Part shown: in pieces, positions 1,325 to 59,702 of the stretch
How positions within the stretch are numbered: the stretch's first letter is position 1
Layout of the letters: every line of letters starts with the position of its first letter
Notes under the pieces: generated by a model
Databases searched by the model: none
What the model saw: only the letters and a program-made list of their open reading frames with translations
Told to the model about the DNA's origin: nothing
Assembly (NCBI GenBank): GCA_950097015.1
Contig: CATNEN010000029.1
Coordinates: 5,022,001-5,086,000, forward strand
Direction of reading: 5' to 3'
Length of the DNA: 64,000 nucleotides
Origin: Macrostomum hystrix
Lineage: Eukaryota; Animalia; Platyhelminthes
Translations under genes and position numbers: made by a program

Positions 1325-2630
1325 AATAGTAGGAGTGTGAGAAATGGAATAGTAGGAGTGTGAGAAATGGAATAGTAGGAGTGTGAGAAATGGAATAGTA
1401 GGAGTGTGAGAAATGGAATAGTAGGAGTGTGAGAAATCGAATAGTAGGAGTGTGAGAAATGGAATAGTAGGAGTGTGAGAAATGGAATAGTAGGAGTGTG
1501 AGAAATGGAATAGTAGGAGTGTGAGAAATCGAATAGTAGGAGTGTGAGAAATGGAATAGTAGGAGTGTGAGAAATGGAATAGTAGGAGTGTGAGAAATGA
1601 AACATTGTAGAAATGAAATGGAATAGTAGAAGTGTGAGAAATGGAATAGTAGGAGTGTGAGAAATGGAATAGTAGGAGTGTGAGAAATGAAACATTGTAG
1701 AAATGAAATGGAATAGTAGAAGTGTGAGAAATGGAATAGTAGGAGTGTGAGAAATGGAATAGTAGGAGTGTGAGAAATGGAATAGTAGGAGTGTGAGAAA
1801 TGGAATAGTAGGAGTGTGAGAAATGGAATAGTAGGAGTGTGAGAAATGGAATAGTAGGAGTGTGAGAAATGGAATAGTAGGAGTGTGAGAAATGGAATAG
1901 TAGGAGTGTGAGAAATGGAATAGTAGGAGTGTGAGAAATGGAATAGTAGGAGTGTGAGAAATGGAATAGTAGGAGTGTGAGAAATGGAATAGTAGGAGTG
2001 TGAGAAATGGAATAGTAGGAGTGTGAGAAATGGAATAGTAGGAGTGTGAGAAATGGAATAGTAGGAGTGTGAGAAATGGAATAGTAGGAGTGTGAGAAAT
2101 GGAATAGTAGGAGTGTGAGAAATGGAATAGTAGGAGTGTGAGAAATGGAATAGTAGGAGTGTGAGAAATGGAATAGTAGGAGTGTGAGACATGGAATAGT
2201 AGGAGTGTGAGAAATGGAATACTAGGAGTGTGAGAAATGGAATACTAGGAGTGTGAGACATGGAATAGTAGGAGTGTGAGAAATGGAATACTAGGAGTGT
2301 GAGAAATGGAATAGTAGGAGTGTGAGAAATGGAATAGTAGGAGTGTGAGAAATGGAATAGTAAGAGTGTGAGAAATGGAATAGTAGGAGTGTGAGAAATG
2401 GAATAGTAGGAGTGTGAGAAATGGAATAGTAGGAGTGTGAGAAATGGAATAGTAGGAGTGTGAGAAATGGAATAGTAGGAGTGTGAGAAATGGAATAGTA
2501 GGAGTGTGAGAAATGGAATAGTAGGAGTGTGAGACATGGAATAGTAGGAGTGTGAGAAATGGAATACTAGGAGTGTGAGAAATGGAATAGTAGGAGTGTG
2601 AGACATGGAATAGTAGGAGTGTGAGAAATG
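1325..2630. repeat. Minisatellite, 23-bp unit GGAATAGTAGGAGTGTGAGAAAT
   Basis: About 55 near-perfect tandem copies starting ~10 bp from the FoxF acceptor. Confidence 0.97.
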
Positions 2631-2926
2631 GAACACTGAGACTGTGAGAAATGGAACCCTGAGACTGAGAAATGGAGCCCTGAGACTGTGAGAAATGGAA
2701 CCCTGAGACTGTGAGAAATGGAGCACTGAGACTGTGAGAAACGGAACCCTGAGACTGTGAGAAATGGAGCACTGAGACTGTGAGAAACGGAACCCTGAGA
2801 CTGTGAGAAATGGAACCCTGAGACTGTGAGAAATGGAGCACTGAGACTGTGAGAAATGGAGCACTGAGACTGTGAGAAATGGAACACTGAGACTGTGAGA
2901 AATGGAACCCTGAGACTGTGAGAAAT
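2631..2926. repeat. Minisatellite, 23-bp variant GGAACCCTGAGACTGTGAGAAAT
   Basis: Abuts the previous array and shares the TGTGAGAAATGGAA core. Confidence 0.95.
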
Positions 2927-3254
2927 GTAATCTTTAATTCACAAAGTGCGCTGACATAATTGTGCTTCCTGGAAGCCAGGAAGTAAATTTCGATGGCAGG
3001 TTGGGAGACAAATTCGACCTTGGCTTAGGGAAACAGACTTGACATTGGTAATGTGCAGTGTTGTCTGCTGCAGATCAAACATAGTCAAGGCAACCAAAGT
3101 TAGCATTGTCAGTTGGTTTGTCAGCCAAAATTTAGAGACAAGTTATGACGCATATTTTCACAGATAGATAAACCACATGATCGTCATGAAACAATTCCTT
3201 CACATGTGATTTACCATTGCATATAGTCTAATTCTGCTATCAACTGTTTTATTA

Positions 3255-3987
3255 TGTTCTGTTCTCTTCTCTTCTGTTCTGTACTGCTCTCTTCTGTTCT
3301 GTTCTGTTCTCTTCTGTTCTGTTCTGTTCTGTTCTCTTCTGTTCTGTTCTGTTCTGTTCTGTTCTGTTCTGTATTGTTCTGTTCTGTTCTGTTCTGTTCT
3401 GTTCTGTTCTGTTCTGTACTGTTCTCTTCTGTTCTGTTCTGTTCTCTTCTCTTCTGTTCTGTTCTGTTCTGTTCTGTACTGTTCTCTTCTGTTCTGTTCT
3501 GTTCTCTTCTCTTCTGTTCTGTACTGTTCTGTTCTGTTCTGCACTGTTCTGTACTGCTCTGTTCTGTTCTGTTCTGTACTGTTCTCTTCTGTTCTGTTCT
3601 GTTCTCTTCTCTTCTGTTCTGTTCTGTTCTGTTCTGTACTGTTCTCTTCTGTTCTGTTCTGTTCTCTTCTGTTCTGTACTATTCTCTTCTGTTCTGTTCT
3701 GTTCTGTTCTCTTCTGTTCTGTTCTGTTCTGTTCTGTTCTGTACTGTTCTCTTCTGTTCTGTTCTGTTCTCTTCTCTTCTGTTCTGTACTGTTCTGTTCT
3801 GTTCTGCACTGTTCTGTACTGCTCTGTTCTGTTCTGTTCTGTTCTGTACTGTTTTGTTCTGTTCTGCACTGTTCTGTTCTGTTCTGTTCTGTTCTGTACT
3901 GTACTGTTCTGTTCTGTTCTGTACTGTTCTGTTCTGTTCTGTTTTCTTCTGTTCTGTACTGTTCTGTACTGTTCTGTACTGTTCTGT
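3255..3987. repeat. Pentanucleotide microsatellite (GTTCT)n with GTACT/CTTCT variants
   Basis: Direct inspection. Confidence 0.97.
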
Positions 3988-23633: not shown

Positions 23634-24779
23634 TTAGCGTCGACACGCGGCCCGAATCCGGCGCACAAATTCACGGCGAAACTTCTTTGCCACCAAGCAG
23701 TAGAGAAAGAAGTTGGCAGAATGATTGGCGTACATCAGCAGCTCCGTGCACGTCTGCGCCAGGTGGTAGCGCGCGAAGAACACTGTGTCGTTGTTCGTCT
23801 CAAAGTTGATGACAGAAGACAGAGAGCTGAACACTTTCAGCACGGTTATCGGCAGGGAGGTGAAGATAAAAAAGAATGACACCAGCAGCAGCATCAGGGT
23901 CACCTGGTTGACGCTGCGGCTGAGGCCGCTGTTCTGATGACTGTGTTGCGACCGGGCCAGCGGCCGCGACTGCAAGTGACCGTACATTGTGGTCGACGCG
24001 CCGAACGCCTGGCTAGAGATGGCGGCTCCTCCGCCGACGGTGGCAGCCAGCGCCAGCGGGCGCAGCCGAACCGACTCACTGGCTTCGGCATTTAACTGGC
24101 CGGAGTAGAGCTTCTTGGAGATGTACAGCTTCCGGATGATGAGGATGTTGCACACGACCAGGATCGAGATGGGAATCAGCGAGTACAACAGAAAGTCCAG
24201 CCAGGCCAGCGGCTGTTTCAACGAGGCGAAGCCCGGGCGGAGGTCGCAGATTCGGTGCGTCCTGTTCGAGCCCGGGCGCCAGTGAAAGTCGTACACGTCT
24301 AGGACGTAGAACCAATGGGCGTTGAGCATCAGGCAGACGGCCAGTAGGCCGCCGATGATGCGTCGGGTGCGGCCAACGGCTGTGTTCGGCGAAGGCAGCC
24401 GGGAGAGCAGCACGAAGACGCGCTCCAGAGTGACGGCTGCGATGAGGAACACGCTGAAATATGTGGCCATTGTAGACAAGAAATTGCTGCCGATGCACAA
24501 CTCTCGACTAAGGACTGAGCAGTCGTGGCCGAGCAGGCACGAGATCCAAGACTTCAGCAGGCCAGACAGCAGGGTGACCTGGTCGGCCACGCTCAGCACA
24601 AGCAGGTAGTTGTGCGTGCCGTTGCGCCTGACGTGACTCATCAGCATCCAAGCGGAGAGACAATTGGCAATGGATCCAACCAGGAGTAACATGGGACTGC
24701 CCACCCAGCAGAGCCATTTGGCGGCACGGAACTCCCAGTGCAGACTGTAAATCAGCAGCTCTTGGTCGGCTAGGGACAT
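23634..24779 (-). CDS. Single-exon class A GPCR, peptide-receptor-like (FMRFamide/myosuppressin-receptor-like group), 381 aa
   Basis: Seven hydrophobic segments with TM1 GSIAN, TM2 LSVAD, TM3 TLERV, TM5 LLYSLIP, TM6 FTSLP and TM7 NHSANFFLY followed by KKFRREF. Confidence 0.9.
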   Translation of the reverse strand: MSLADQELLIYSLHWEFRAAKWLCWVGSPMLLLVGSIANCLSAWMLMSHVRRNGTHNYLLVLSVADQVTLLSGLLKSWISCLLGHDCSVLSRELCIGSNFLSTMATYFSVFLIAAVTLERVFVLLSRLPSPNTAVGRTRRIIGGLLAVCLMLNAHWFYVLDVYDFHWRPGSNRTHRICDLRPGFASLKQPLAWLDFLLYSLIPISILVVCNILIIRKLYISKKLYSGQLNAEASESVRLRPLALAATVGGGAAISSQAFGASTTMYGHLQSRPLARSQHSHQNSGLSRSVNQVTLMLLLVSFFFIFTSLPITVLKVFSSLSSVINFETNNDTVFFARYHLAQTCTELLMYANHSANFFLYCLVAKKFRREFVRRIRAACRR

Positions 24780-33392: not shown

Positions 33393-34107
33393 TAGCCAAT
33401 CTGGATATGTTTACTGTATAAATATTTAGAGGACCTTACTGACCGTACGAGTATGGTGTACGCTGAATTTGTAAGTTTAACTGCTATAAATGTTCAATTT
33501 TCTATCAATTTAGCCAAATATTCTAATGATCAAACCAATCCCATCTGAGCATGAGCAATTACAACGGAGTTTTATGTGCATATATATTACTAGCTTAATA
33601 AAGATAATAATAATATAATAATAATAATAACAATTGCAGGAGGGCTGCGGGCAATGACACAAGCCTTGTCTCCCCAAATATTAATTCGACCCCAGAGACG
33701 TTGGTGCCGAGAGGTCTAGTGTACGACAAGCATAGAAACAGAAATCTAGCAGTAATTATCTTCCCATTGCTTCCAACAGAAGCATTTCTCTTTGACAAAG
33801 AAGAGAAGATTGAGGCTGATGTACAAACTACGAGTATACATACTAGAGAGGTTGATGCCAGCTGTGCGCTGTCAAATGTTAAACTGACTGAACGAACAAC
33901 GGACAAATGTAATGCAATCCAGATCTGAGTTCAAATATAATAAATTCCTCCATTTTAGAGAATTCATTTGCACTTTGGCTTCTATGTAGATTCAAACAAA
34001 TAAGCTGTGAAATCGATTCTCTTCTCTAATTATACGCACATATATTGAGCTATCTAGCTGAGCAATTCATTCAGCATTCCAATGGAAAAGGATAGAATTT
34101 CGATGTT

Positions 34108-37100
34108 TTAATCTCTAGGGCTCAAGTTTAGCACGCCCAGGCCCGGGATGGATCGAACTCCGCGGTCAGGCCAATCGCCGCAGCCGACAAACGCGAAGGC
34201 GCCATCTCCGCTTTCTCGCCAGGCGGTTAGCGTCGCTGGCGCCAGCTTGTGAACGGCGGCACTGAGCAGTGAGGACTCGTCGCCTACATCGGCGATCACT
34301 AGCGAACTGAAGATGGGAGCAGCGAGTGATGGAGGATGAGCAGGATTCAGTTGAGTAGTCAGGGAATTTAGGGAACTAGGTTGAGCAGTTTGGGGATTTA
34401 GGGAGCTGGGTTGAGCAGTTTGGGGATTTAGGGAACTGGGTTGAGCAGTTTGGGGATTTAGGGAACTGGGTTCAGCAGTCTGGGGATTTAGGGAACTGGG
34501 TTGAGCAGTTTGGGGATTTACGGAACTGGGTTGAGCAGTCTGGAGATTTAGGGAACTCAATCTACCAGTTTGGGGATTTAGGGAACTGGGTTCAGCAGTT
34601 TGGGGATTTAGGGAACGGGTTCAGCAGTTTGGGGATTTAGGGAACTAGGTTGAGCAGTCTGGGGATTTAGGGAACTGGGCTGAGCAGTTTGGAGACTTAG
34701 GGAACTCGTTTGAACAGACTGGAGCATTTGGGAACGCAATTGAACAGTCATCCAGTTGCGGAATGGAAAGCCTTCCAGCATGGCAACTAGAAGCACACAC
34801 CTGCTAGTGAGCCCTCCGCAAAGACCGCTAAGCTGGTCGAAAAGCGCTCCAGATCCTTCCAGATCCCAGTCAGCTCGGCTAGCCGAAGCTCCATCAGCCG
34901 ACTCAGATTCCTCCGACGAAGCGAGCTGTAGCGCCAACAGACGGTCGCACAGGCGGAAGGAGGCCTGCAGGGCGGGCACGTCGGAACCGGCCTGGGCCAT
35001 GACCTGCAGCAGACCGATCTGGCGCAGAAAGGCTCGCCTTTCGCGGCCGGCTCCGCCACACACGGCCATCAGCGGGCAGGCCCGCGAGGCAAACGCGTGA
35101 CGGCCGGCTGGCCGACCAGCTCCCAAACGCCGGGCCAGAGGCGGCGGCAGGGGGTGACGACCGCAGCGGACTGCGAGGCGGTCGCCGAACTCCGGCCTAG
35201 TGTAGCCTCTCTGCACGCTGGCCAAAGCCAATGAGCAGAGAAAGTCGGCGTTGCTGACGGCGTCCACGCATTTGAACAGCTGCATGGCGTGAGCCGGCAG
35301 AGATTCGAACAGCAGCTCGAATATTCTCAGCGTCAGCTTGTAGACGGCTTCAACGCTAACTTCGATGTCGGCATTTAACGCAGCCAGCTGTCGGGTGGTG
35401 AAGCTGCAGCTGCGCCGACCGATGGTCAAACTTAGCAGCTCAGGCGCCAGTCGGTTAGCCGTCTCAATCAGTGTTGGCGCCCTCCGCTGCTGCTGCTGCT
35501 GGCTCTGTCGCCTGTGCGGTGTCCGAAGTCTGGTGTCGACAAAGTCGCTGCTGCACCAGCTGCTGCTGCTGTTGCCGTTGTTATTGTTGTTTCCAGAATT
35601 CGCTGCGCGATAATTGTGAGCAGTGTTATTGGCTGTACTTGGGGTGTTAACACCGGAGAGACTGAGCAGCAGCGAACTGACAGTGACGTCGTCGTCGTCG
35701 TTCAAGTCGCCGTCCTGAATTGGGGCCGCAAGGGAACTTCTATAGTTGGTAAATCAAATCTTACTCACCAATGCGAAATTTATTTCAATTCACTAATTGA
35801 GTCTGACTGTGAGAATTACATATTACTGAAGCAAAGTTACTGACAGATATCAGAGACACGGAATTACTGACGGATATCAGAGACACGGAATTACTGACAG
35901 ATATCAGAGACACGGAATTACTGACAGATATCAGAGACACGGAAATACTGACGGATATCAGAGACACGGAATTACTGACAGATATCAGAGACACGGAAAT
36001 ACTGACGGATATCAGAGACACGGAATTACTGACAGATATCAGAGACACGGAATTACTGACGGATATCAGAGACACGGAATTACTGACAGATATCAGAGAC
36101 ACGGAATTACTGACGGATATCAGAGACACGGAATTACTGACAGATATCAGAGACACGGAATTACTGACGGATATCAGAGACACGGAATTACTGACAGATA
36201 TCAGAGACACGGAATTACTGACGGATATCAGAGACACGGAATTACTGACAGATATCAGAGACACGGAATTACTGACGGATATTAACTAACATAGAATTAC
36301 ATACACATACCAGCTGACGCAGAATGACTGACAGATATTAACTGACAAATAATTACAACGGATATTTACTGACACAGAATTACTGACGGATATCAGATGA
36401 AACAGAATGACTGACGGATATTAACTGACACAGAATTACTGACGGAAATTAGCGGACACACAGAATTACTGACGGATATTAACTGACAAATAATTACAAC
36501 GGATATTTACTGACACAGAATTACTGACGGATATCAGATGAAACAGAATTACTGACGGATATTAGCTGACACACAGAAGTACTGACGGATATTAGCTGAC
36601 ACACAGAAGTACTGACGGATATTAGCTGACACACAGAATTACTGACGGATATTAGCTGACACACAGAATTACTGACGGATATTAGCTGACACGCAGAAGT
36701 ATTTTTTATCGCTACATTGACACAGAAAATTAACTATAATAGATTGAAAATTAATAAGAGACCTACAAAAAAAGAAAAACTCCAGCAACTCGTTTATTAG
36801 CTCAATTTATTACCAGGCAAGATGGACTTGATGTCTAAAAGCGATGAAGACTGGATTAAGGCGGTCCAGACTTTCTAATTATCTAAATGGAAAAGGACAA
36901 TTTAGTTTAAAAGCATGTCATAAATTTCTGAGATTAGAGACAAATAATGCACAGCATTTTAAATAGATGTCATTTGATAATTAACTAATCGCATAAAGCA
37001 GCAAAAATGCGATTTTAGAAGTGCAATTCTCCGGATTTACGTATTTATGCAAGACATAGACATCTTTGATATTCGGTTTCGTTATGTGTCGTTAAAAATG

Positions 37101-40100
37101 TTCACATTTCTTGTTATTTGTAATATCAAATGAATACTTGACGCCCTGATCATTACCCATATTTTATGAGAGTTCTGTATGTAAGGTGACTCATTTTTAT
37201 CATAGATTTGACTGGTGTATGACTTTATTATACAAATTTGCTGTTGGTTTTATCATAGACCATTCAGTAGGCTTAACAAGTGAGCTGCAGAGAAGACCAG
37301 ACGATACAGATTTGACCATAGACAATTGGAAGTTTGACCATAGAGAAATAAGTCAGAGGCTCGTTAGAATCATTATTCTATGGCTATTCCTTAAGCGTTG
37401 TCCGAGCTGAACGAAAAAAGTTTAAGCTAAACCGTTTGACATGCTGAAGGAATGACTCATTTGTCAGAAGAAACTGTGTAACTAGTCCTAAAAAATAGAA
37501 CTGAAAAGCTCACACTCGAGCTGGGAACTGCAGAAGAGCTGCATCAGTCAGCTGGAAAATCCGTTAGTCACTAATGATTACCTCTCATTTGCAGAACAAG
37601 CTCTCAGTATAGCTACATACTGATAGCTTCCTTCACCGACCGTTACCTTTCTGAGAGCTTAACGAACAGGTCAGAAGGGGATGTACAGAATTAGACAGAT
37701 GGTCAGAGAGAAGGCAGTTAAAAAAGACTTCCATTACTAGCCATAGCTCTCCGGCTTAGCCCTAACTAAATTACAACTAGAAAAGACAAAAAAGATAAAT
37801 TACAATGTGCTTTTTAAAGAAGACTAGAATAAAGAAGACTAGAAAAACATTTCCGAAGTGAAAATGATACATCTGTAATACAGTAAGACAAAATCTCAAG
37901 CACTATCTCGAGATATTGCATGCACTTATCCAACATGAGCAGAAAGCAAATAAACTCACTTTGCTCACCCCACTGCACAGGGTAGAAAAGGAGCTGCAGC
38001 CACCCTGCATACCCACTGCAGCCACCCTGCATACCCCACTGCAGCCACCCTGCATACCCCACTGCAGCCACCCTGCATACCCCACTGCAGCCACCCTGCA
38101 TACCCCACTGCAGCCACCCTGCATACCCCACTGCAGCCAACCTGCATACCCCACTGCAGCCACCCTGCATACCCCACTGCAGCCACCCTGCATACCCCAC
38201 TGCAGCCAACCTGCATACCCCACTGCAGCCACCCTGCATACCCTAATGCAGCCACCCTGCATACCCCACTGCAGCCACCCTGCATACCCCACTGCAGCCA
38301 ACCTGCATACCCCACTGCAGCCACCCTGCATACCCTAATGCAGCCACCCTGCATACCCCAATGCAGCCACCCTGCATACCCCAATGCAGCCACCCCGCTT
38401 ACCCAATGCAGCCACCTAAATTACCCAACTGCAGCCACCCAACTTACCCCACTGCAGCCACCCTGCATTCCCCACTGAAGCCACCCCGCTTACCCAATGC
38501 AGCCACCCCGCTTACCCACTGCAGCCACCCAAATTACCCAACTGCAGCCACCCTGCATTCCCCACTGAAGCCACCCAAATTACCCAACTGCAGCCACCCA
38601 ACTTACCCAACTGCAGCCACCCTGCATTCCCACTGAAGCCACCCACATTACCCAACTGCAGCCACCCAACTTACCCAACTGCAGCCACCCTGCATTCCCC
38701 ACTGAAGCCACCCTGCATTCCCCACTGAAGCCACCCTGCATACCCCAATGCAGCCACCCTGCATTCCCCACTGAAGCCACCCTGCATACCCCAATGCAGC
38801 CACCCTGCATACCCCAATGCAGCCACCCTGCATACCCCAATGCAGCCAGCCAACTTACCCCACAGCAGCAACCCCGCATACCTCACTGCAGCCACACTCC
38901 ATACCTACTGCAGCCACCCCACCTACCCACTGCAGCCACCCTGCATACCCCACTGCATCCACCTTGGAAACACAATTGCTTACCACCTGTTGTCGCCTTG
39001 CAGTAAGGAAGCGGCCAAGGGCCTGCCGATTGCACTGGGCGTGGAAGCCTCGCTGCTTAGTGTGCGCCAGCGCCGCCTCCAGGCCAATGCTGTCAGCCAG
39101 GCCGCTTACGAGCGCCTCAGCAGCGGCCACCTGATTGGCGTACAGCTGTCGTGCCCGGTCCAAAGACTCATTGACGCCTTGCCTGACGGCGCCGATGCGC
39201 TGGGCGTGCATAGTCAGCCGGCCGCGGCCGTAGCGCATCTCCGGATTGGCCAAAACTTCGAAGCGGGCGCGAAGACGCGGCAACGCCGGCTCGTCTAATG
39301 CGCGCCGCAAATTAGCAAACAGAGGATGCTGCAGCGCGGCCAGCACCCGGCTCAGCGGCTCCAGGCGACCCAGCATGTGGTGCAGGTAGATGATGCGGTT
39401 AATGCGGGTGCGGGCGACGTTGACGGTTGGCGGCAGGCGGGAACGACGACGGCAGAGAGAATTGATGCAGTTGAAGTAGGAGAACTCGGCGAGCTCCGCG
39501 CGCAGCGACTTGTAAGAATGATTTTTGTAATTCAAGATGTGCAAATGCTCTACTAATAGTAGCCTCAGGCATGTTTAGAGACTGCAGTTTAACTTTTCAT
39601 ACGGTTTTCGAATTAGCTTTTGAGAATACCAGAAGATGCAAATGAGCTTCTCAGAACACGAGAAGACATATAATATTGTTACAGTAATTTTAAATGTAGG
39701 GGTGAGTGGCAGAGCGGTTAGCACGTTTGCCTCTCGCACCAAGGTCCCTGAGCTCGATTCCGCGACGAGGCCACATTCATTTGGGACGCAGCCGTGGAGA
39801 GAAGGCTTCAGGCCTGTCATGCGAATTAATCACTTGAGGGCCAACCTCCAAGACACAGTGAGAGTGAGAAAGTCAGGGCAGATGTACACACCTGTTTTGA
39901 GCGATGGACAGAATTGCCTCCTCGCTGGCTGCGGGTCAAGTGTCACTAAATGTGTGCCATAGCCCGCAGCCCTCCTGCAATCATTATTATTATTTTTTAA
40001 GTTCAAATGTATTTTATTACCTACAGCGCAAATCTCAAGTACTACTGTAATATCGCGATGGACTCTGACGAAAGCATGAGTAAACTAGTTTGACTGCTCG

Positions 40101-42526
40101 TATCAGTTACTCAGAGATAGCTATGAGCAACGGGTTTCACGATTGCAGTCACATTTTCGAAGATACCTGTGTGACCCAGTAAACTAGAGCATGCTCACCA
40201 ACCTGCAGAATAGTTGGACTCATTCTCAGCTCCTCAACACAGTCCTGCCTAGTCCGAATGGAATGTGCATCAGTTAGCGGCTGCAGCAGTGACATCCGGA
40301 GCAGGCGGGCCCCTCCGCCAGTCAGGGTATAGTTGAGCACAGAGAACAGATTGCCTCCGACTCGGCCGTCTAATGACTGAACTAGCTCTAGCTGACTGCA
40401 AGGAATAGCAAATACAAGTAATTAAATCGATGCTGCAACTGAGACTGATATATCCTCTAATTTCCTTAATACTTAGTTCTATTATAGAGGCCTTCGGGCA
40501 AGATAAACGCTGTCCACTTATCGTTCGCATTATCAACTCAATGGGATTGTTTTATCGCATTTTTGTCTATGGCTAAACCCTGTTCAACATGTAGCACAGC
40601 AGATGAACTAACTTTCAAAGCCTGTCCGACGTCAGCATCTTCGAAATATTCAGGCGATTCTTGGCCGTGGCACTGGTGGCACTGGTGACAAGGGCAACTA
40701 ACTAATATTAAACCACTATAGCGAAAGCATTGGTTTAATAATAAATATACTTTATATTATATAATCAACAATAATAGCCAAAATGATTATACTATTAAAC
40801 TTTGTGAGCACATGTTTTCTAATTCTGTAAGTTATTTCAGCGGATCATCGGATTTTCATGGCGATTGGTTGAATCAGAAAAGATGGAAAACATGTAAGTA
40901 TTTGAAATACCCTGTAGTATTTCTATTGTTAAGCAAAGAAGAGAATCGTTTGCGGTATATGAGAAACAATTTGACAAGCAGATTAGAAGTTAAAATACCG
41001 AGCAGTGCTGTAGTCCATAATGAGCGACGCCGAATGAGCATTGTAAGCTAACTGAACACTTTCATCGTCGAAGACAGTATCCAATTGCATCTCCGAGAAG
41101 CTTTCAAGCACTGCGCAGGAGTAAAATATGAAATTGCACACAGGCAGTTGCTGCAGGACCAGCCGACTGTCGGGATGGCAAACCCGGCGTACAAATGCTC
41201 TACCGTCAGCTTCGTTGAATAAGCTCCTTGGCGCCGAGACGATTCTACAATCGGGAAATTTGTCAGCTAGTAGGCGAAATAGTTCATAGACTTCTGAGTC
41301 GCACAGCGTGTCCGGCAGCAGTACAATCGACGGATCGAACCAGCACACCAGGCTGAGAGTCTTCTGATAGGCCAAGCAGTCCGTCAGCTTCACAATGTCC
41401 AACCGGTTGATCTCCAAGTCTAGCACGGCGATAGCCAGATCACGTGACCTGGTGCCCCGACCCTCGCTGATGGCCATACAGCGGGCCGGGTCCGACGGGC
41501 AGCGCCAATTCTGCTGGCTCTTGGACTCGGAGGAACGGCCTGCCATGGAATGGAGACAATTACGTCATCTCAGAGCAGTTAGATATCTTCTCAAATGGGA
41601 TAGAAAACTGTTAAAAGGACTAGAAGACTAGAAACCGTATGATTAAAGTGAGCAATTGCTGATGAGTAGATGTTTCTGTTGAGTCTGAGCAAATGCTCAG
41701 AGCTGACAAATATCTCGAAGTTTGAGCAACCGCTCACTTTTTGCATGAACAAAGATTTATCTCAAACTTCAAGCAAATTGCTCAGTCGCTTAGAACTATA
41801 GATATAGAATTGGTATGAAATCCCTTTCCTTTTCTTACCTTTCTTTCCCTTTCTGACGTGAGTCAATACTCAAGATGCGAGCGTTAGCTTTATTCTTACT
41901 GAATTTAGTCTTTCGTCAAGTTCGAGCAAAGGCTCAATTTATTGATATGGCCTAACATTATTCAGTGTTCAAGCAAAGTATTAGACCCGAATTTTATATT
42001 AGTGTACACATTTTGGATTTTTGAGCATTTTACCAACTCCATTTACTCTCGCCGCTTTCCAAAAGACATTAAAATTAATATGCTTCACGAGGAGAGTACA
42101 AAAACTAACTGCAACCCATTTATGATTTGTGACGCTCTAAACAAATGACAGAAACATTTTACCTGTACTAACTAATGGCGAAGTCATCACTTTGAAAACG
42201 TTGGAAGCTGCAGTGACGCCGACACCACCGATTCCCAGTTGCAAGGCCGCAGATGCGGGTGCAGGCAAATCAGAAAATCTGGCAGTAGCCGAGTTTTTCC
42301 GCTTGATTGTCCCCCTTTGACTGTAGCTTCGATGTGTAGCATCGGAGGCAGTTGCTGCTGTAGCAGCTGAGCGCAGCGCAGTCAAGTAGCTACTGTTGTT
42401 GTTGCTGCTACTGAGCTGACTGCTGTAATCATCAAGTTCCAGACTGCTGGCCCTATGTGCACCACGTAATAAGCTTTGAGTAGCAGAGGCAGCTGATGGT
42501 GCCCGGCAATTATGGTGCCGTTTCAT
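34108..42526 (-). CDS. MSH4: MSH4-like (MutS-gamma) protein with degenerate ATPase domain, ~911 aa, 6 exons
   Basis: Exons 42526-42163, 41539-40999, 40395-40203, 39508-38984, 35714-34801 and 34306-34108 total 2736 nt, open frame, GT-AG. MSH4-type motifs: MAISEGRG, RSLFNEADG, LELV...LFSVLNYTLTGGGARLLRMSLLQPL, RIIYLHHML, AVRQGVNESLDRARQLY, YTRPEFGDRLAVRCGRHP, LRQIGLLQVMAQAGSDVPA. Confidence 0.85.
34355..34730. repeat. Minisatellite, 30-bp unit GGGGATTTAGGGAACTGGGTTGAGCAGTTT (MSH4-like intron 5)
   Basis: About 12 copies. Confidence 0.93.
35838..36700. repeat. Minisatellite, 27-bp unit AGAGACACGGAATTACTGAC(A/G)GATATC, grading into ~30-bp variants
   Basis: Perfect to ~36290 with alternating A/G units, then degenerate. 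Confidence 0.93.
37985..38960. repeat. Minisatellite, 23-bp unit GCAGCCACCCTGCATACCCCACT
   Basis: Starts ~25 bp inside the intron from the MSH4-like exon 4 donor. Confidence 0.95.
39696..39997 (+). mobile_element. tRNA-derived SINE family 2, in MSH4-like intron 3
   Basis: A box TGGCAGAGCGG, B-box-like GAGCTCGATTCC, distinct body (ttgagggccaacctc...gagaaagtcagggcagatgtacacac) and an (ATT)n tail. Homologous copies at 57600-57957 and 325-460. Confidence 0.78.
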
Positions 42527-44778
42527 AGCTGAAATACCAAAGTACAAACTGCTGTCACTGCTGTTTTCCTAGCTTTCAATGAAAATTTTAGAACGATCTT
42601 AAATGTTACAAAAAGTTATAAGTTAATAATAATTTTTCTAAACTAAGTCACTGGAATAGCTAAAGTTTCGATATTTTGTATATCCTTGTATGGATTCCCT
42701 GCAAAATATATTCAAATGCTAGCAACTTAGACTTTGGATTAAAAAATGTAGACATAATTTCATATGTTGTATTTAGCTATATTTCTAACTAAAAGCAATA
42801 AATAAACTTATAAATACCTATACTACTATGAAAACTAAAAATACTTAGTGTTAGCAATCTAGGCTCAACACATTTTGTAAAAAAGAATATTAAGTTTTCA
42901 TTTTTCACTATAATTGCTTTGCTCCAGCTGCTTGACTACATTTTCTAATTTCCATAAAGGCTTAGTACAAGAATACAATCCAATTTGGTAACAGCCACTT
43001 CAGTAACAACTGCTTTGGCCATTTGAATGTCTTACAGTTATGATGTAATAACTTAACAGTAGTAAATTTTATCTAAGTTCTGCTATTATTAACTATTATT
43101 AAACTTTACACACAATAAATACAGTTTTATGCATTTTTCTTTTCTCTTCTTTCTGTCAATATTTGACTTTCAGTTTATTTACAAGCAAGATTTATATATT
43201 TTGCATATATGAAAAATACTTCACATGTACTAAAGCTTTTAGAATACTTTATTATTTCACAAATACTATACAAAACCAAAAAAATTGAAGAATAGAGAGT
43301 CAAATATAAAACATAGTATTATTGGGGACATCATCATATAACATGCATATATCTATTGTCAAAAAGGTATTAATTACATTAAATCTATAAAATGCTTAAT
43401 GACAATTAGTATTCTAGTGGCAAATAGTATAAATTCCTTAAAACTAATGTAAAATGCAAAAAAATTGTAGTACATTCACTACTAGATTTATTTCATGGTG
43501 AAGTTTGTAGCGCGACGTTTATTGTATTATATATATATTGCATTGCCGATTATAAATAGCATCTGAAAACTATTCAGTAATTAAAATCACTCAAACATAA
43601 GTAATAAAATAAAGCAACCAACCTGCTACTCCCAATCTACTCTAAGTGGTAAAACATTTTATTTTCATCCGCACCGGCGCAAACGTGTGTCTTACATTTT
43701 AAATTACTCTTTCGTTCACATTTAGCGTGAAGAAATAAACAAACAATACACTTCTTTTTTATTAAAAGTTTAAATCAAAGACGTTTGATAATAATTGTTT
43801 ATTATGATTTTTTCTGATGTTGATTTAATGCTAAATCTAACTTTGATAAGTAAACAGCTATTTTTAACTTTTGTCCTAATGATCGTGATAGATCAATATA
43901 TTTTCCAAGGAGCAGGTGCTACAGCTTGATCACATTGCGGAATAAAGGTAGAGAGTCTATTTTCTTTATTAATTTTATTTAGCAAGCATAATATTGGTTC
44001 ATGTAGCGTCCTATTTTGCATTCTAATGTATGTATCTCTGTTTAGAGTTTAAATGTCTTAACATTAAAGATCATCAAAAGTTCCGTTTGCTAAATTTGAC
44101 TAGCCTAGAACTAAGTAGAAATTACGATCTTGAGATATTTCATTCCATTTTAATTATTTTCTAGGTTATATAAACATTTTGGCGGAAAAGTTATTTTCTT
44201 AAAAGATTTTGAAATGGAAACGTAAAGATTGTACTAACTTTTCGGCTATTTGACTAAAAAAATTCTTTACTATCGAAATGTCAATCTGCTAACCTAAAAA
44301 TTATACAAAACAAATTAGCTAAGAAAAAAATTGAAGTTGAATTTATATTTTATAGACCTTAAATTAAAAGCTTTTGTGGATTATCAATACAAATTCGATT
44401 CTCGAATTGCTGGAACTTCCGCGCCTTTTGTATGGATGTCCAGAATTTTAGTGCCAGCCTGCAAATTCTGCCCAAGCAAGATAACTAAATTCCATGTATT
44501 CACATTGGAAAGGAAAGGTAAGAATGTGGCAGGCCTTGTTCGTTGTCAGTGTGAATAGAAGCTGGAAATACTATTTTAGCATAGTTTCTAGCACACCGTG
44601 TAAGAAAAATTTATCTAAAATCAATTTTGATTTATGAGTCACTGCGCGTCTTCGAGAATTTTTTAAATTTATTATTTAGGAGTGCTTTAATTGTCATTGT
44701 TTTTCTCTCGTGGAAATAACACATCTTGTTACATTTGTGTCTTTAATACATTTGCATTCAAATGCCTTGCAGCAAGTT

Positions 44779-47263
44779 ATGGCACCTCTTCGTTGGGGAA
44801 TCTGCGCCACTGGCAAGATCTCACAGGACTTTGTCAATGCTCTAGCATTGAGTCCAGAGAATCACACTGTTGTGGCTGTTGGTGCTCGGGATCCAAAAAA
44901 GGCGCAAGAATTTGCGGCTCGATTCGGCATCAAGACCGTTGTAGATACATGCGAGGCACTTGGCTCGTGCGAAGATGTTGGTGAGTTAAACTATTTGTGC
45001 AATGTTGGTTTTAAACCAATCTAAACCTTCGAAGAGCGCATACTACAGTCAGCTGTTAGTCTAAAGTGAACTGTATAGCTGCGTACTTTAACAATACTCA
45101 AACATTGCTTCCACATTATCCATTTCGCGCAAAGCCGATCGAGACTGAGTCGGCACGAAAACGAAGCGTGATTATAGAAGTTTGAGATCGAGTTCAAGTT
45201 GAAGCAATTGACTCACGTATATGAAAAATGTTTAACTCATGAATCACGCTCAATTACAAGGCGGTGGCGTGACTGCCCCTAATCTTATCACGTGTTTTCT
45301 TACCAATCCTGAGTTCGGGTCAATGCGTTGAACTATTTGCAGGCCACTAAGTGAAACAGATCTACATGTTTATCTAATACTCGCATTGCCTCTCTAAAGA
45401 CCTGAATTCTTATCACGATTTTGTGAGCCTCTACCACTATTATTCCTGTCTAAAAGTTCAACTAGCGTTATTGTGAACAATTTTAATCGAAAGTAAGTAT
45501 TGCAACAGTCGGTCGTTTGAATCTAACATTAGGCATGATCGAAGAATCAAGAATTAACGTTGCTTTTACAAGAAAACTACTAGCAGTAGTTTTCTCTTAA
45601 TTTCGACACCGCGCAGACGTAGTCTACATAGGCAGCCTCACCTACGTTCACTACGAGCAAGCGACTCACTATCTGAAGGCCGGCAAGCATGTGCTCTGCG
45701 AGAAGCCGATGACCCTGCTCCCAGAGCAGACCGCTGAGCTCATGGCCCTGGCCAAGTCTGTCAACCGCTTCCTCATGGTGGCCCTGTGGAGCCGCTTCTT
45801 TCCTGCTTACACTCGACTGCGTCAGGCTGTGACGAGCGGCGAGCTGGGCACCGTGCGGCTGGTGCAGGCCAACTTCTGTCTGCCTCAGCCTGAAGAGGTT
45901 CGCCTGCTGGAGAAGCGACTGGGAGGCGGCACACTGTTCGACTTCGGCGTCTACCTGGCCCACCTGGCCTGCTGGGTGTACGGCGGCGAGCGTCCGGTCT
46001 CCATCACGGCCGCCGGGCACCTCAATGACACTGGCGTTGACCGCAGCGGCAGCATGATTCTTAAGTGAGAGCGTTTCAGATATCTTTTTATAGTGCAAGT
46101 CAATAATTCTAAAACAGAAAACTATATTTATATATATACTTGTTAATTTCTACTATTGATAAAATTTATATAAAACATATATTTTTCTCAGATACTCCGA
46201 CAATCGTCTGGCCTCCCTAACTTGGAGTCTGGACTGCGGACCAGCCGCCACAGCCCATATCCTTGGCGATAAGGGTACTGCTACGGTGGGTCATTAATTT
46301 TATACAGCCTTTGAGAGTGTCTTGAAAATTGGTTTGGGGTGGAGTTGCAATTTAATATTTGGAGTAGATCCATAGCAAGCAATTCTGCCCATCTCGCTGG
46401 CTCTTGGAAACACGCTCAATGATACGAACGCAGGCACACATTCGCAGAGGGTCTAAATCTGCACGAGAAATTTTCATATTCTCAAGCATTGTACATGACT
46501 TTCAGAGCTCAGGGATGTGAAGCTATTGATCATGTGCATAAATATTGGGGACCTTGGGGAATCACTTAAATCTTTAAATTCCTATTTGCTACGTATCGTG
46601 TACGTATCGTTTGACGCTATTGGTCCAAAGCTGTCACGTGATAGACCCTTCTTCCAATAAAGACATCCGTTCTTGTATTGCTAATATTAAGAAAGGTGGG
46701 GAATTCTAAATTTGCGCATTTTTAGAACGTACTTATTTTACTTAAAGAATAGGGTACCATGTGGGACAATTTTATGTATGGTTCATTGACAATGCATGCT
46801 TCCAGCTCGGAGATTATGTTTGGTGCGCCACAAAGCTCACCATTAACGGTGAGCAGCTGCACTTCCCGACTCAGCCTGTACGCGAGGGAGAGAAGTTCAA
46901 CTTCTATGAGTGCGGTGGTCTCCTGTATGAAGCTGACCATGTCAAGGATTGCTTGGAAAAGGGTAAAGCATTGTTCATTTTGTACGGATTTAGACGGATT
47001 TGACGGATTTAGATTGTAGTTTATGAGCATTTTGGGCGGACAACGCAGGTGTAGTGGACTGCGAGATGACTTCCATTTTCGATCGACCGGTGCGGTGCGA
47101 TTATTGTACTCTCAGCTATTGCCAATCATGACTATGAACCGAAAATCTTGCAGGTCTAATTGAGAGTCCGATACTGCCCAACTCTGACTGCCAGCTGATT
47201 CACGACATCCTGGCCGAGGGGCACAAGCAGTTGGGCATTGACTACCACAATCTGAATGCCTGA
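44779..47263 (+). CDS. DHDH: Dimeric dihydrodiol dehydrogenase / D-xylose 1-dehydrogenase (Gfo/Idh/MocA family), copy 1, 336 aa
   Basis: Exons 44779-44980, 45617-46064, 46192-46285, 46806-46962 and 47154-47263 (1011 nt). Motifs LRWGI...G.IS.DF, VVAVGARD, HVLCEKP, WSRFFP, GGGTLFDFGVY, GVDRS, LYEADHV..CL..GLIESP. Confidence 0.93.
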
Positions 47264-58511: not shown

Positions 58512-59702
58512 ATGGTGCTAGGTAAAGCTCTACTGGCCTACCATATTGTGTTAGGCACCGTGTTTACATTTGGCTTTGTCGGCAATCTGCTAGTTCTGCT
58601 TGTGATCTTGTCGCTCAAATCGCCGGCAAATGCTGTTACCAATATCTACGTGCTTAACCTGGTCATTGCCGACTCGCTCCACCTTCTGTCGATACTGCCA
58701 TTTATTCGCCTGTCCATTGTGAAGTCGTGGCTCTGGGGCAACTTTCTGTGCAAGCTGTTCTTCATGAACCACTTTGCTAACTCCAATGTCACCATCTACA
58801 TCATCACCGCCATGAGCTTCGATCGCTACAAGGCCGTGGTGTCGCCGTTCAATTCCGCCCGCTACCGCACCAAGAAGTTCGCCGTCATCCTTCTAGTCTG
58901 CCTCTGGCTCCTGAGCTGTCTAGTTGTAGCGCCGATCTACCTGAACGCCTACGTCGATTCCTTGGAAATGCGTCGCAATGTCACGGACGCCAACGGTACG
59001 ATAGTTGAGGAGCTGCGCCTCGTCTACAGGTGCCTGCACCCAGCGTTGGGCTCAGTTAACCGATCCGAGGGCCTGCTCAAGAAGCTGTTCACCGACACCT
59101 ACTATTTCAGCCGCTACGTGTTTGTCACTGGCTGTGTACTGCCCGGCGTCCTACTCTGCACCTTCTACGCATTGATTCTGCGCAAGCTCTGGCAGATGAA
59201 ACGGTCGCGCGCCTCCGGAGCCCAATCGCAGCAGCGCTTTGAAAAGGTCACCATTCTGGTGGTGGCTGTGGTCACCTTCTATCTGGTCTGCTGCCTGCCC
59301 CACTGGGTCTACATCAATGTGGTCGTTGAGATGAGCGAGTCCATCCGAGCCTGGGCGCCCATTGTGAGCCACATCACCACCCTGCTTGGCTACGTGAACA
59401 GCGCTGGCAATCCTATTCTGTACGCCTTCCTCAACGATAGCTTCCGCGCCTCACTGCGCGCCATCGTGGCCCGCCGTCTGCCAGCCGGTTGGCGGGGCGC
59501 CGGCACCGACGCAGCTGGCGTCAATAACAATCGCAAAGCCGGCGACGACAATGCCGCTGTGGGTCTGCGGGACGCTGCCAACGATGACGAGCCGCTGCCA
59601 CTGCTACCCGGCGGCGCCGCATTCAACACCAGCAACGGCTTGAACTTGGACAAGGCTTCAGTCGGAGTTGATACCCGCATCACTGAGACAGTCATCGATT
59701 GA
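58512..59702 (+). CDS. Single-exon class A GPCR, somatostatin/allatostatin-C/opioid-receptor-like, 396 aa
   Basis: GFVGN in TM1, VTNIYVLNLVIAD in TM2, CK...MSFDRYKAV, CWLP-like CCLPHW, and YVNSAGNPILYAFLNDSFR in TM7/helix 8. Confidence 0.9.
   Translation: MVLGKALLAYHIVLGTVFTFGFVGNLLVLLVILSLKSPANAVTNIYVLNLVIADSLHLLSILPFIRLSIVKSWLWGNFLCKLFFMNHFANSNVTIYIITAMSFDRYKAVVSPFNSARYRTKKFAVILLVCLWLLSCLVVAPIYLNAYVDSLEMRRNVTDANGTIVEELRLVYRCLHPALGSVNRSEGLLKKLFTDTYYFSRYVFVTGCVLPGVLLCTFYALILRKLWQMKRSRASGAQSQQRFEKVTILVVAVVTFYLVCCLPHWVYINVVVEMSESIRAWAPIVSHITTLLGYVNSAGNPILYAFLNDSFRASLRAIVARRLPAGWRGAGTDAAGVNNNRKAGDDNAAVGLRDAANDDEPLPLLPGGAAFNTSNGLNLDKASVGVDTRITETVID

What the first reader, a model, noticed from the sequence alone, without database searches (positions are those of the whole stretch)
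34108..35714. MSH4-like gene with an intact frame but an inactivated ATPase (candidate pseudo-ATPase MutS-gamma subunit)
Seen: the spliced ORF aligns to MSH4 through the connector, lever and clamp, and up to RPEF..L.V..GRHP. Where MutS proteins carry Walker A (ITGPNMSGKST) it reads VCGGAGRERRA (35031-35057), with no Lys or Ser. The STF signature is replaced by an acidic/Ser insertion. Walker B (SLILIDELGRGT) reads SLVIADVGDES (34276-34299), losing the catalytic Glu. The FATH motif reads FVGC, and the protein stops ~20 aa later, so the C-terminal helix-turn-helix dimerisation region is missing. Flanking scaffold motifs (LRQIGLLQVMAQAGSDVPA) and all six exons remain in frame over 912 codons. Established: MSH4-MSH5 forms an ATP-driven sliding clamp on meiotic recombination intermediates, and these motifs are essentially invariant. 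Inference: loss of every catalytic motif without frameshifts suggests selection for a non-catalytic role, such as a scaffold, a dominant-negative subunit or half of an asymmetric clamp, rather than ordinary pseudogene decay.
Basis: partly seen in the sequence, partly recalled or inferred. Interest (0 to 1): 0.8.

Follow-up and report, generated by a model that had tools for sequence, protein, structure and literature searches.

The report
Expressed, conserved ATPase-dead MSH4 in Macrostomum
A Macrostomum flatworm transcribes, splices and keeps under purifying selection an MSH4 meiotic-recombination gene that has lost every ATP-binding and ATP-hydrolysis residue and its C-terminal dimerisation end, so this MutS clamp subunit apparently works without its own ATPase.

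Summary
The six-exon, 912-codon model is open. Transcriptome-like contigs carry both 3' junctions exactly as predicted, 34306/34801 and 35714/38984.

Walker A reads GGAGRERRA instead of GPNMSGKST. The Walker B Glu and the FATH His are gone. Only 26 residues follow the FATH position, against a median of about 160. No alternative exon in the window supplies the motifs.

The nearest relative is a Macrostomum lignano protein with the same six exons, the same upstream neighbour, the same dead motifs and the same truncation. dN/dS against it is 0.15 (95% interval 0.12-0.19) at dS of about 1.3. Domain V gives 0.24 and domains II-IV give 0.06. This is not a pseudogene.

The gene sits inside the MSH4 clade (100/99), and the predicted fold is MutS.

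New here: all ten tapeworm and schistosome MSH4s keep GK[ST] but lack the catalytic Glu and the His. The erosion therefore looks flatworm-wide and stepwise.

Most likely this is a non-catalytic clamp subunit that leaves nucleotide switching to MSH5. MSH5, a second MSH4 copy and gonad expression could not be tested.

The parts
42163..42526 (-). Exon 1 (ATG at 42526; disordered Ser/Ala-rich N-terminus, codons 1-121)
   Evidence: ORF plus GT donor. M. lignano has the same exon. Not covered by the laid stretch, but X2 contig length (2821 nt) equals the model plus about 22 nt of 5' UTR and 61 nt of 3' UTR (inference).
40999..41539 (-). Exon 2 (MutS connector, domain II)
   Evidence: Weak Pfam MutS_II hit. 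tblastn to canonical MSH4s E=5e-17 and 81% identity to M. lignano. GT/AG sites.
40203..40395 (-). Exon 3 (start of MutS domain III)
   Evidence: Pfam MutS_III 46.3 bits, above the 34.1 cut-off. GT/AG sites.
38984..39508 (-). Exon 4 (lever and first half of clamp)
   Evidence: Transcript contigs of X2, X3 and X4 cover 38983-39510 and join it to 35713/35714.
34801..35714 (-). Exon 5 (clamp insert, lever return, first half of domain V)
   Evidence: Contigs of X1-X4. Alignment to Taq MutS.
34108..34306 (-). Exon 6 (Walker B remnant, FATH remnant, stop at 34110-34108)
   Evidence: X2 contig joins 34306 to 34801 and runs unspliced through the stop to 34047.
35463..35714 (-). Acidic and Asn/Ser/Gln-rich insert of about 85 residues at the tip of the clamp hairpin (codons 542-625)
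   Evidence: Present in the mRNA. Present but poorly conserved in M. lignano, dN/dS 0.38. pLDDT below 50 in the model. Other MSH4s have about 19 residues in this segment.
35031..35063 (-). Walker A remnant VCGGAGRERRA (Gly to Glu, Lys to Arg, Ser to Arg, Thr to Ala)
34971..35030 (-). Post-P-loop helix and strand FLRQIGLLQVMAQAGSDVPA, retained scaffold
   Evidence: 19 of 20 residues identical in M. lignano. Local dN/dS 0.02-0.07. pLDDT 96-98.
34830..34919 (-). Acidic/Ser insertion followed by the helix that replaces the STF signature (EGSGALFDQL)
   Evidence: pLDDT below 50 for the insertion, with a helix after it.
34273..34305 (-). Walker B remnant SLVIADVGDES (Asp kept, catalytic Glu lost, GRGT lost)
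34180..34197 (-). FATH remnant FAFVGC (His lost); the protein ends 23 residues later
34307..34800 (-). Intron 5, mostly a 30-bp x 12 minisatellite (34350-34717)
   Evidence: Skipped in the X2 contig, GT..AG on the minus strand. TRF.
35715..38983 (-). Intron 4, with 27-bp x 30 and 23-bp x 42 minisatellites
   Evidence: Skipped in X2, X3 and X4 contigs. TRF.
44710..46068 (+). Divergent upstream neighbour, a GFO/IDH/MocA oxidoreductase (synteny marker)
   Evidence: Pfam on window ORFs. The same neighbour lies upstream of the M. lignano copies.

Best explanation
This is the Macrostomum orthologue of MSH4, one of the two subunits of the meiotic MutS-gamma clamp. It is a living gene that no longer has a nucleotide site of its own.

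Shown:
- It is transcribed and spliced.
- It descends from MSH4.
- It keeps the MutS connector, lever and clamp under strong purifying selection.
- Its domain V keeps the P-loop-fold scaffold but has lost the Walker A Gly-Lys-Ser/Thr, the adenine-contacting Asn, the Walker B Glu, the switch His, the STF signature and the C-terminal helix-turn-helix end.
- The same state is fixed in M. lignano.

Inferred:
- The protein still embraces recombination intermediates through its lever and clamp as a structural half-clamp.
- The ATP/ADP switch is carried by its partner MSH5 alone. This would resemble heterodimeric ABC ATPases that have one degenerate and one consensus site.
- The loss was stepwise. 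Tapeworm and schistosome MSH4 keep ATP-binding residues but lack the hydrolysis residues, so a flatworm ancestor probably already had a non-hydrolysing MSH4 site. The Macrostomum line then lost binding as well.
For: Transcript and splicing: one 2821-nt contig joins 34047-34306, 34801-35713 and 38983-39510. The 35714/38984 joint appears in three runs. No run covers the unique intron sequence at 36700-37990.

Open frame of 912 codons.

Orthologue in M. lignano with identical exon structure, the same divergent GFO/IDH/MocA neighbour and the same dead motifs (GGAGQDRRD, SLVIVD-VGNQ, FAFIGC, same end).

dN/dS (NG86 estimates; 95% bootstrap intervals):
- whole gene: 0.15 (0.12-0.19), with dS about 1.3-1.6
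- domains II-IV: 0.06
- lever return: 0.05
- domain V: 0.24 (0.16-0.36)

In canonical and neodermatan pairs domain V is the best-conserved part. Here the order is reversed, 71% against 86% identity.

Phylogeny: inside the MSH4 clade at UFBoot 100 / SH-aLRT 99, on a stem of 2.16 substitutions per site. The best tree unites it with neodermatan flatworm MSH4 (55/84; FastTree 96).

Structure: AlphaFold2 model of the M. lignano orthologue has pTM 0.78 with a confident domain V core. Foldseek matches MutS, MSH2 and MSH3 at E about 1e-29.

All 10 neodermatan MSH4s read GK[ST] plus DD or DG plus no His. Of 65 non-flatworm MSH4s, 56 have GK[ST]+DE+TH, and the rest look like truncated or mis-spliced models.
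Against: MSH5 of Macrostomum was not found or examined, so the partner and its intact ATPase are assumed.

The C-terminal helix-turn-helix that holds MutS dimers together is missing, and the STF signature that completes the partner's site in trans is also gone. Both speak against a conventional heterodimer.

In yeast the Walker A allele msh4-G639A behaves like a null (PMC3828297), so ATP binding by Msh4 is needed there.

No tissue information: transcription in the gonad is not shown.

A second, canonical MSH4 elsewhere in the genome is not excluded. The evidence is only that none appears among the 150 best HMMER representatives or in the word searches.

Only one other species was available, and dS is near saturation.

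One of three M. lignano copies has two 1-bp deletions.
Confidence: 0.68

Rival explanations
1. Neofunctionalised ex-MSH4. After losing the ATPase and the helix-turn-helix dimer contact, the protein no longer pairs with MSH5. It acts alone or with another partner as an ATP-independent DNA-binding or scaffold protein, possibly outside crossover designation.
For: Only 26 residues remain after the FATH position. The STF signature is lost. An 85-residue acidic disordered insert sits at the DNA-facing clamp tip. The stem branch is extreme, at 2.16. Purifying selection fits any retained function.
Against: Lever, connector and clamp residues that are near-invariant in MSH4 are almost all kept, and they are the most constrained parts. 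This is what a clamp partner needs. Single-copy orthology and conserved synteny give no hint of a freed duplicate.
Confidence: 0.2
2. Divergent duplicate. A canonical MSH4 exists elsewhere in Macrostomum genomes and does the normal job. This copy is a regulatory or dominant-negative paralogue.
For: M. lignano is a recent polyploid with three loci of this gene. The whole genome could not be searched here.
Against: All three M. lignano loci are the degenerate type. No flatworm-like canonical MSH4 other than tapeworm sequences appears among the 150 best representatives of 1.8 billion proteins, a library that includes the M. lignano proteome. The word search with a tapeworm MSH4 found none (low sensitivity). 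The best tree has one flatworm clade.
Confidence: 0.08
3. Decaying pseudogene, or an assembly or annotation artefact that hides canonical motifs.
For: Every catalytic motif is gone. Domain V evolves four times faster than the rest. One M. lignano copy is frameshifted.
Against: The frame is open over 912 codons in two species separated by dS above 1. dN/dS is 0.15, with an upper bound of 0.19. Spliced transcripts carry identical motifs. There is no alternative exon.
Confidence: 0.03

Closest known systems
Canonical MSH4 (yeast Msh4, human MSH4), a subunit of MutS-gamma
   Same: Descent: inside the MSH4 clade at 100/99. No mismatch-binding domain I. Connector, lever and clamp architecture. RPEF..GRHP and the post-P-loop helix are retained. 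MutS fold.
   Different: Walker A Gly-Lys-Ser/Thr, the adenine Asn, the Walker B Glu, the GRGT motif, the STF signature and the FATH His are all replaced. About 140 C-terminal residues including the helix-turn-helix are absent. An 85-residue insert sits in the clamp.
MSH4 of neodermatan flatworms (Schistosoma, Echinococcus, Taenia, Hymenolepis, Schistocephalus, Spirometra, Anoplocephala)
   Same: Same phylum, and sister in the best tree. Walker B Glu and switch His are lost (DD or DG; TA, SS or TN). The clamp region carries Ser/Asn-rich insertions.
   Different: Neodermatan proteins keep GK[ST], the STF signature and a long C-terminus, and their domain V is still their best-conserved domain. 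They look able to bind but not hydrolyse ATP. The Macrostomum protein looks unable to bind it.
Heterodimeric ABC-type ATPases with one degenerate nucleotide site (for example CFTR; PMC5626490, abstract listed)
   Same: MutS domain V is an ABC-class ATPase that works as a dimer with two composite sites (established knowledge). In CFTR one site hydrolyses ATP and the other is inactive. One dead and one live site is the arrangement proposed here.
   Different: This is a functional analogy only. Degenerate ABC sites usually still bind ATP, whereas here the P-loop itself is destroyed. The live partner site (MSH5) has not been seen.
Engineered yeast msh4 and msh5 ATPase alleles (PMC3828297)
   Same: [quoted passage not shown] The MSH4 site is therefore the more dispensable one.
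   Different: The ATP-binding allele msh4-G639A is null-like in yeast. Macrostomum carries Glu (Asp in M. lignano) at the second P-loop glycine and still keeps the gene under selection.

Membership tests
MutS family (fold and domains II-V) | MutS domain III (core/lever) recognisable by profile | tested here: met
   PF05192 at 46.3 bits against a cut-off of 34.1 on exon 3. It is also the precomputed Pfam hit for the M. lignano orthologue.
MutS family (fold and domains II-V) | MutS domain V (ATPase) recognisable by profile at the curated threshold | tested here: not met
   PF00488 scores only 25.6 bits against a cut-off of 30.2, and covers profile positions 12-46 of 188.
MutS family (fold and domains II-V) | Overall three-dimensional fold | tested here: met
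   AlphaFold2 model of orthologue P0152 has pTM 0.78. Foldseek matches E. coli MutS and human MSH2/MSH3 at E about 1e-29, TM 0.5-0.6. This is a model, not a structure, and its alignment consists of canonical MSH4s.
MSH4 orthologue group | Phylogenetic placement inside MSH4, apart from MSH3, MutS and other homologues | tested here: met
   The MSH4 clade that includes the window protein has UFBoot 100 / SH-aLRT 99. No named MSH5, MSH2 or MSH6 was in the tree; outgroups were one MSH3, bacterial MutS and unnamed eukaryote-like rows.
MSH4 orthologue group | No N-terminal mismatch-binding domain I | tested here: met
   No PF01624 hit on any exon product or on P0001. The N-terminus is disordered.
MutS-type ABC ATPase (functional class) | Walker A GxxxxGK[ST] | tested here: not met
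   Reads GGAGRERRA in the window and GGAGQDRRD in M. lignano.
MutS-type ABC ATPase (functional class) | Walker B hhhhDE with catalytic Glu | tested here: not met
   SLVIADVG: Asp kept, Glu absent.
MutS-type ABC ATPase (functional class) | Switch His of the FATH motif | tested here: not met
   FVGC in the window, FIGC in M. lignano.
MutS-type ABC ATPase (functional class) | C-terminal helix-turn-helix dimer contact | tested here: not met
   26 residues after the FATH position, against a median of 162. The transcript runs through the stop codon. No downstream exon was found by tblastn.
MutS-gamma complex | Heterodimer with MSH5 and meiotic expression | not testable with these tools
   No MSH5 seed sequence or eukaryote genome search was available. 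Supplementary tables of three Macrostomum expression papers do not list the gene.

The most novel reading that the evidence does not exclude
Flatworms run MutS-gamma as a single-engine clamp. MSH4 first became a bind-only subunit (the Neodermata state). In Macrostomum it then became a nucleotide-free subunit, in which the conserved acidic residue and Arg-Arg pair of the former P-loop hold domain V in a fixed, nucleotide-independent state. This would be natural proof that crossover designation needs only one of the two MutS-gamma ATPase sites, and in Macrostomum perhaps not the canonical domain V dimer contact either.
Probability: 0.35. Interest if true: 0.85.

Novelty: new variant of a known kind. 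Interest (0 to 1): 0.68.

Why it matters
MutS-gamma is thought to become a sliding clamp on recombination intermediates when both subunits bind ATP, and these motifs are close to invariant across eukaryotes.

A naturally ATPase-dead MSH4 kept under purifying selection would show how much of the nucleotide cycle the complex really needs. So would the series from canonical, through hydrolysis-dead (tapeworms, schistosomes), to binding-dead (Macrostomum).

M. lignano, which carries the same gene, is listed as a transgenesis-capable model (PMC5730564 and PMC7053086, abstracts). The question can therefore be tested directly. I found no paper in the held library that reports this.

Tried and rejected
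- Alternative exons supplying GKS/T, DE, TH or the helix-turn-helix: tblastn of five canonical MSH4s against all 64 kb found nothing credible beyond the six exons.
- Assembly error: independent contigs agree with the window.
- Other Macrostomum orthologues: word-based searches with P0152, with a tapeworm MSH4 and with exon 5 returned only the M. lignano cluster or nothing. The test of selection therefore rests on one species pair.
- MSH5: no seed sequence could be obtained. The PDB copy gave no MSH4 or MSH5 match, and none of the looked-up representatives was an MSH5.
- Apparent Walker A losses in other MSH4 hits (P0054, P0081, P0100, P0102): these are intron-retention or missing-exon gene models, or they still have GKST.
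- Expression class of Mlig008393 and Mlig032607: absent from the text and from the held supplements of three papers.
- Differences between the window and the organism B transcripts: three synonymous and four conservative replacements, too few to test.
- Rfam scan and inverted-repeat search of the locus: nothing.
- Position inside MSH4: flatworm monophyly is in the best tree but only at 55/84, so I do not treat it as established.
- Earlier notes of this scan contain nothing on MutS genes.
Full report
**What is in the sequence.** The minus strand between 42526 and 34108 carries a six-exon gene. Joining 42526-42163, 41539-40999, 40395-40203, 39508-38984, 35714-34801 and 34306-34108 at GT..AG sites gives 2736 nt, which is 912 codons with a single terminal stop.

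- Pfam recognises MutS domain III above threshold on exon 3. Domain II and domain V score only weakly, below threshold.
- phmmer against solved structures aligns exon 5 to Taq and E. coli MutS and to human MSH3, across the lever and the start of domain V.
- That alignment puts GGAGRERRA where MutS has GPNMAGKST. The flanking RPEFGDRL..GRHP and FLRQ..AQ.GS.VPA are kept.
- The motif coordinates are 35063-35031 (Walker A remnant), 34305-34273 (Walker B remnant) and 34197-34180 (FATH remnant).

**Is it transcribed, and are the junctions right?** I laid contigs of four public runs on 34000-39999.

- One 2821-nt contig of run X2 lies on 34047-34306, 34801-35713 and 38983-39510.
- The 35714/38984 joint is also present in X3 and X4.
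- The contig runs unspliced through the stop codon into the 3' UTR.
- No run covers the unique part of intron 4 (about 36700-37990), so these runs behave as RNA.
- The 1120 nt of the contig that lie beyond the laid stretch match the 1098 nt of exons 1-3 plus a short 5' UTR. This is an inference, not something shown.
- Two mismatch-free contigs of X1 and the X2-X4 contigs cover the Walker A region.
- The seven coding differences between window and transcripts are three synonymous and four conservative replacements, none of them in a motif.

Assembly error and mis-splicing are therefore excluded. tblastn of five canonical MSH4 proteins against the whole window finds the six exons and nothing else. 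There is no hidden exon for Walker B, FATH or the helix-turn-helix.

**Whose gene is it?** An exhaustive HMMER search of 1.8 billion representatives gave one close hit, at 82% identity over the query. All other hits were at or below about 41% identity (most 25-38%) and scored far lower.

- The close hit is a hypothetical protein of Macrostomum lignano. Its 90% cluster holds further copies.
- The M. lignano locus has the same six exons with the same phases.
- It has the same divergent upstream neighbour, a GFO/IDH/MocA oxidoreductase.
- The next-best hits are named MSH4 in a snail, a chytrid, a sea anemone, birds, insects and tapeworms.
- In an IQ-TREE PMSF analysis of 41 sequences, the Macrostomum proteins fall inside the MSH4 clade (UFBoot 100, SH-aLRT 99). 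They sit on a very long stem of 2.16 substitutions per site.
- The best tree unites them with schistosome and tapeworm MSH4, but only at 55/84 (96 in FastTree).
- No named MSH5, MSH2 or MSH6 sequence could be included in the tree.

**Is it decaying?** No. Codon comparisons against M. lignano give:

| Region | dN/dS (NG86) | 95% bootstrap interval |
|---|---|---|
| Whole gene (873 aligned codons) | 0.15 | 0.12-0.19 |
| Domains II-IV | 0.06 | 0.04-0.09 |
| Lever return | 0.05 | 0.02-0.11 |
| Domain V | 0.24 | 0.16-0.36 |
| Exon 6 alone | 0.39 | 0.19-0.71 |

- For the whole gene, dN is 0.19 and dS is 1.3-1.6. dN/dS ranges from 0.11 to 0.15 depending on the method.
- The segment around the former P-loop is among the most conserved, at 0.02-0.07.
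- The dead motifs themselves are shared: GGAGQDRRD, SLVIVD-VGNQ and FAFIGC. The protein also ends at the same place.
- Two of the three M. lignano loci are intact and differ at dN/dS 0.37.
- The third locus has two 1-bp deletions in exon 5. This is either a redundant copy dying in a polyploid or a long-read assembly error.

**Where has constraint moved?** In every canonical or neodermatan pair I compared, domain V is at least as conserved as domains II-IV, with one exception (for example 91 against 84, 85 against 70, and 76 against 64% identity). The exception is the deep schistosome-tapeworm pair, at 40 against 44%. In Macrostomum the order is clearly reversed, at 71 against 86%.

Of the columns that are at least 85% conserved among 75 other MSH4s, those outside the nucleotide site are almost all retained. 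Those that line the site are replaced: N718, N735, M736, G738, K739, the STF Ser and Phe, the Walker B Glu and Leu, and the FATH Thr.

**Structure.** An AlphaFold2 model of the M. lignano orthologue was built with 78 homologues as its alignment. It has pTM 0.78.

- The strand order of the P-loop domain is predicted up to the FATH strand.
- pLDDT is 96-98 for the post-P-loop helix.
- Confidence is low for the acidic insertion before the former signature helix, and for the 85-residue clamp insert.
- Foldseek matches E. coli MutS and human MSH2/MSH3 at E about 1e-29.

The model leans on canonical sequences, so it shows that the fold is compatible. It does not prove it.

Only 26 residues follow the FATH position, against a median of about 160. 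The helix-turn-helix that holds MutS dimers together (established knowledge of MutS structures) is therefore absent.

**A wider pattern found on the way.** In the same alignment, all ten neodermatan flatworm MSH4s (eight tapeworm, two schistosome) show a partial version of the loss:

- They keep GK[ST] and the STF signature.
- They read DD or DG for the Walker B Asp-Glu.
- They read GL[CS]T or CHNT for GRGT.
- They have Ala, Ser or Asn for the FATH His.

Among 65 non-flatworm MSH4s, 56 have all three motifs. The remaining deviants are truncated or mis-spliced models.

Loss of the hydrolysis residues therefore looks general in the sampled flatworms, and Macrostomum has gone one step further by losing nucleotide binding too. 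Whether the first step happened once cannot be decided, for two reasons. The replacing residues differ between lineages. Planarians, polyclads and catenulids were not sampled.

**How it most likely works.** The shown facts are descent from MSH4, expression, selection and the destruction of the nucleotide site.

From these I infer a non-catalytic clamp subunit. The lever and clamp still encircle the recombination intermediate, and the nucleotide switch is left to the partner. This resembles ABC-class dimers with one degenerate site; in CFTR, one site hydrolyses ATP and the other is inactive (PMC5626490, abstract).

Yeast genetics already show that the Msh4 site is the more dispensable for hydrolysis. 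msh4-R676W is wild type while msh5-R685W is null. However, the binding allele msh4-G639A is null-like (PMC3828297). The Macrostomum state goes beyond what yeast tolerates.

The loss of the dimer contact and of the trans-acting signature keeps a second reading alive, in which the protein has left the canonical heterodimer. I rate the half-clamp reading at about two in three. The neofunctionalised reading gets one in five, an undetected canonical paralogue under one in ten, and pseudogene or artefact a few per cent.

**Limits.**
- MSH5, a genome-wide search for a second MSH4, tissue expression and any biochemistry were out of reach with these tools.
- Selection rests on one species pair with dS near saturation.
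- No paper in the held library reports degenerate MSH4 motifs in flatworms. That is not proof of novelty.

Noticed in passing
alignment A1; proteins P0051, P0026, P0038, P0187-P0191, P0194, P0196: All sampled tapeworm and schistosome MSH4 proteins keep Walker A but have lost the Walker B catalytic Glu (DD or DG), the GRGT motif and the FATH His. MSH4 looks bind-only across parasitic flatworms.
   Followed up: partly
L003:13938-14837 (M. lignano NIVC01000995.1): The third M. lignano copy of the gene has two single-base deletions in exon 5, giving a stop at codon 606 (annotated as the 606-aa protein P0151). This is either a real pseudogenised polyploid copy or a long-read assembly error.
   Followed up: partly
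window 34350-34717, 35837-36682, 37994-38963: Introns 4 and 5 of the gene are largely filled with minisatellites (30 bp x 12, 27 bp x 30, 23 bp x 42). The 23-bp array runs up to about 20 bp from the exon 4 donor.
   Followed up: no
window 39600-39999 (intron 3): Hundreds of contigs at 90-95% identity pile up here, with summed depth of 1400-3300 in X2-X4 and many internal joints. This indicates a highly repeated, transcribed element family. There was no Rfam hit and no inverted repeat.
   Followed up: partly
window 35463-35714: An 85-residue acidic and Asn/Ser/Gln-rich disordered insert sits exactly at the exon 4/5 boundary, in the clamp hairpin. Neodermatan MSH4s also carry 40-75-residue Ser/Asn-rich insertions in the clamp, but before the preceding strand.
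   Followed up: partly
window 23634-24779 (-) and 58512-59702 (+): Two single-ORF rhodopsin-family GPCR genes (Pfam 7tm_1, E=3e-17 and 2.5e-41).
   Followed up: no
window 44710-46068 (+): A GFO/IDH/MocA oxidoreductase gene lies divergent to MSH4. The same arrangement occurs at two M. lignano loci, so micro-synteny is conserved despite dS above 1.
   Followed up: yes
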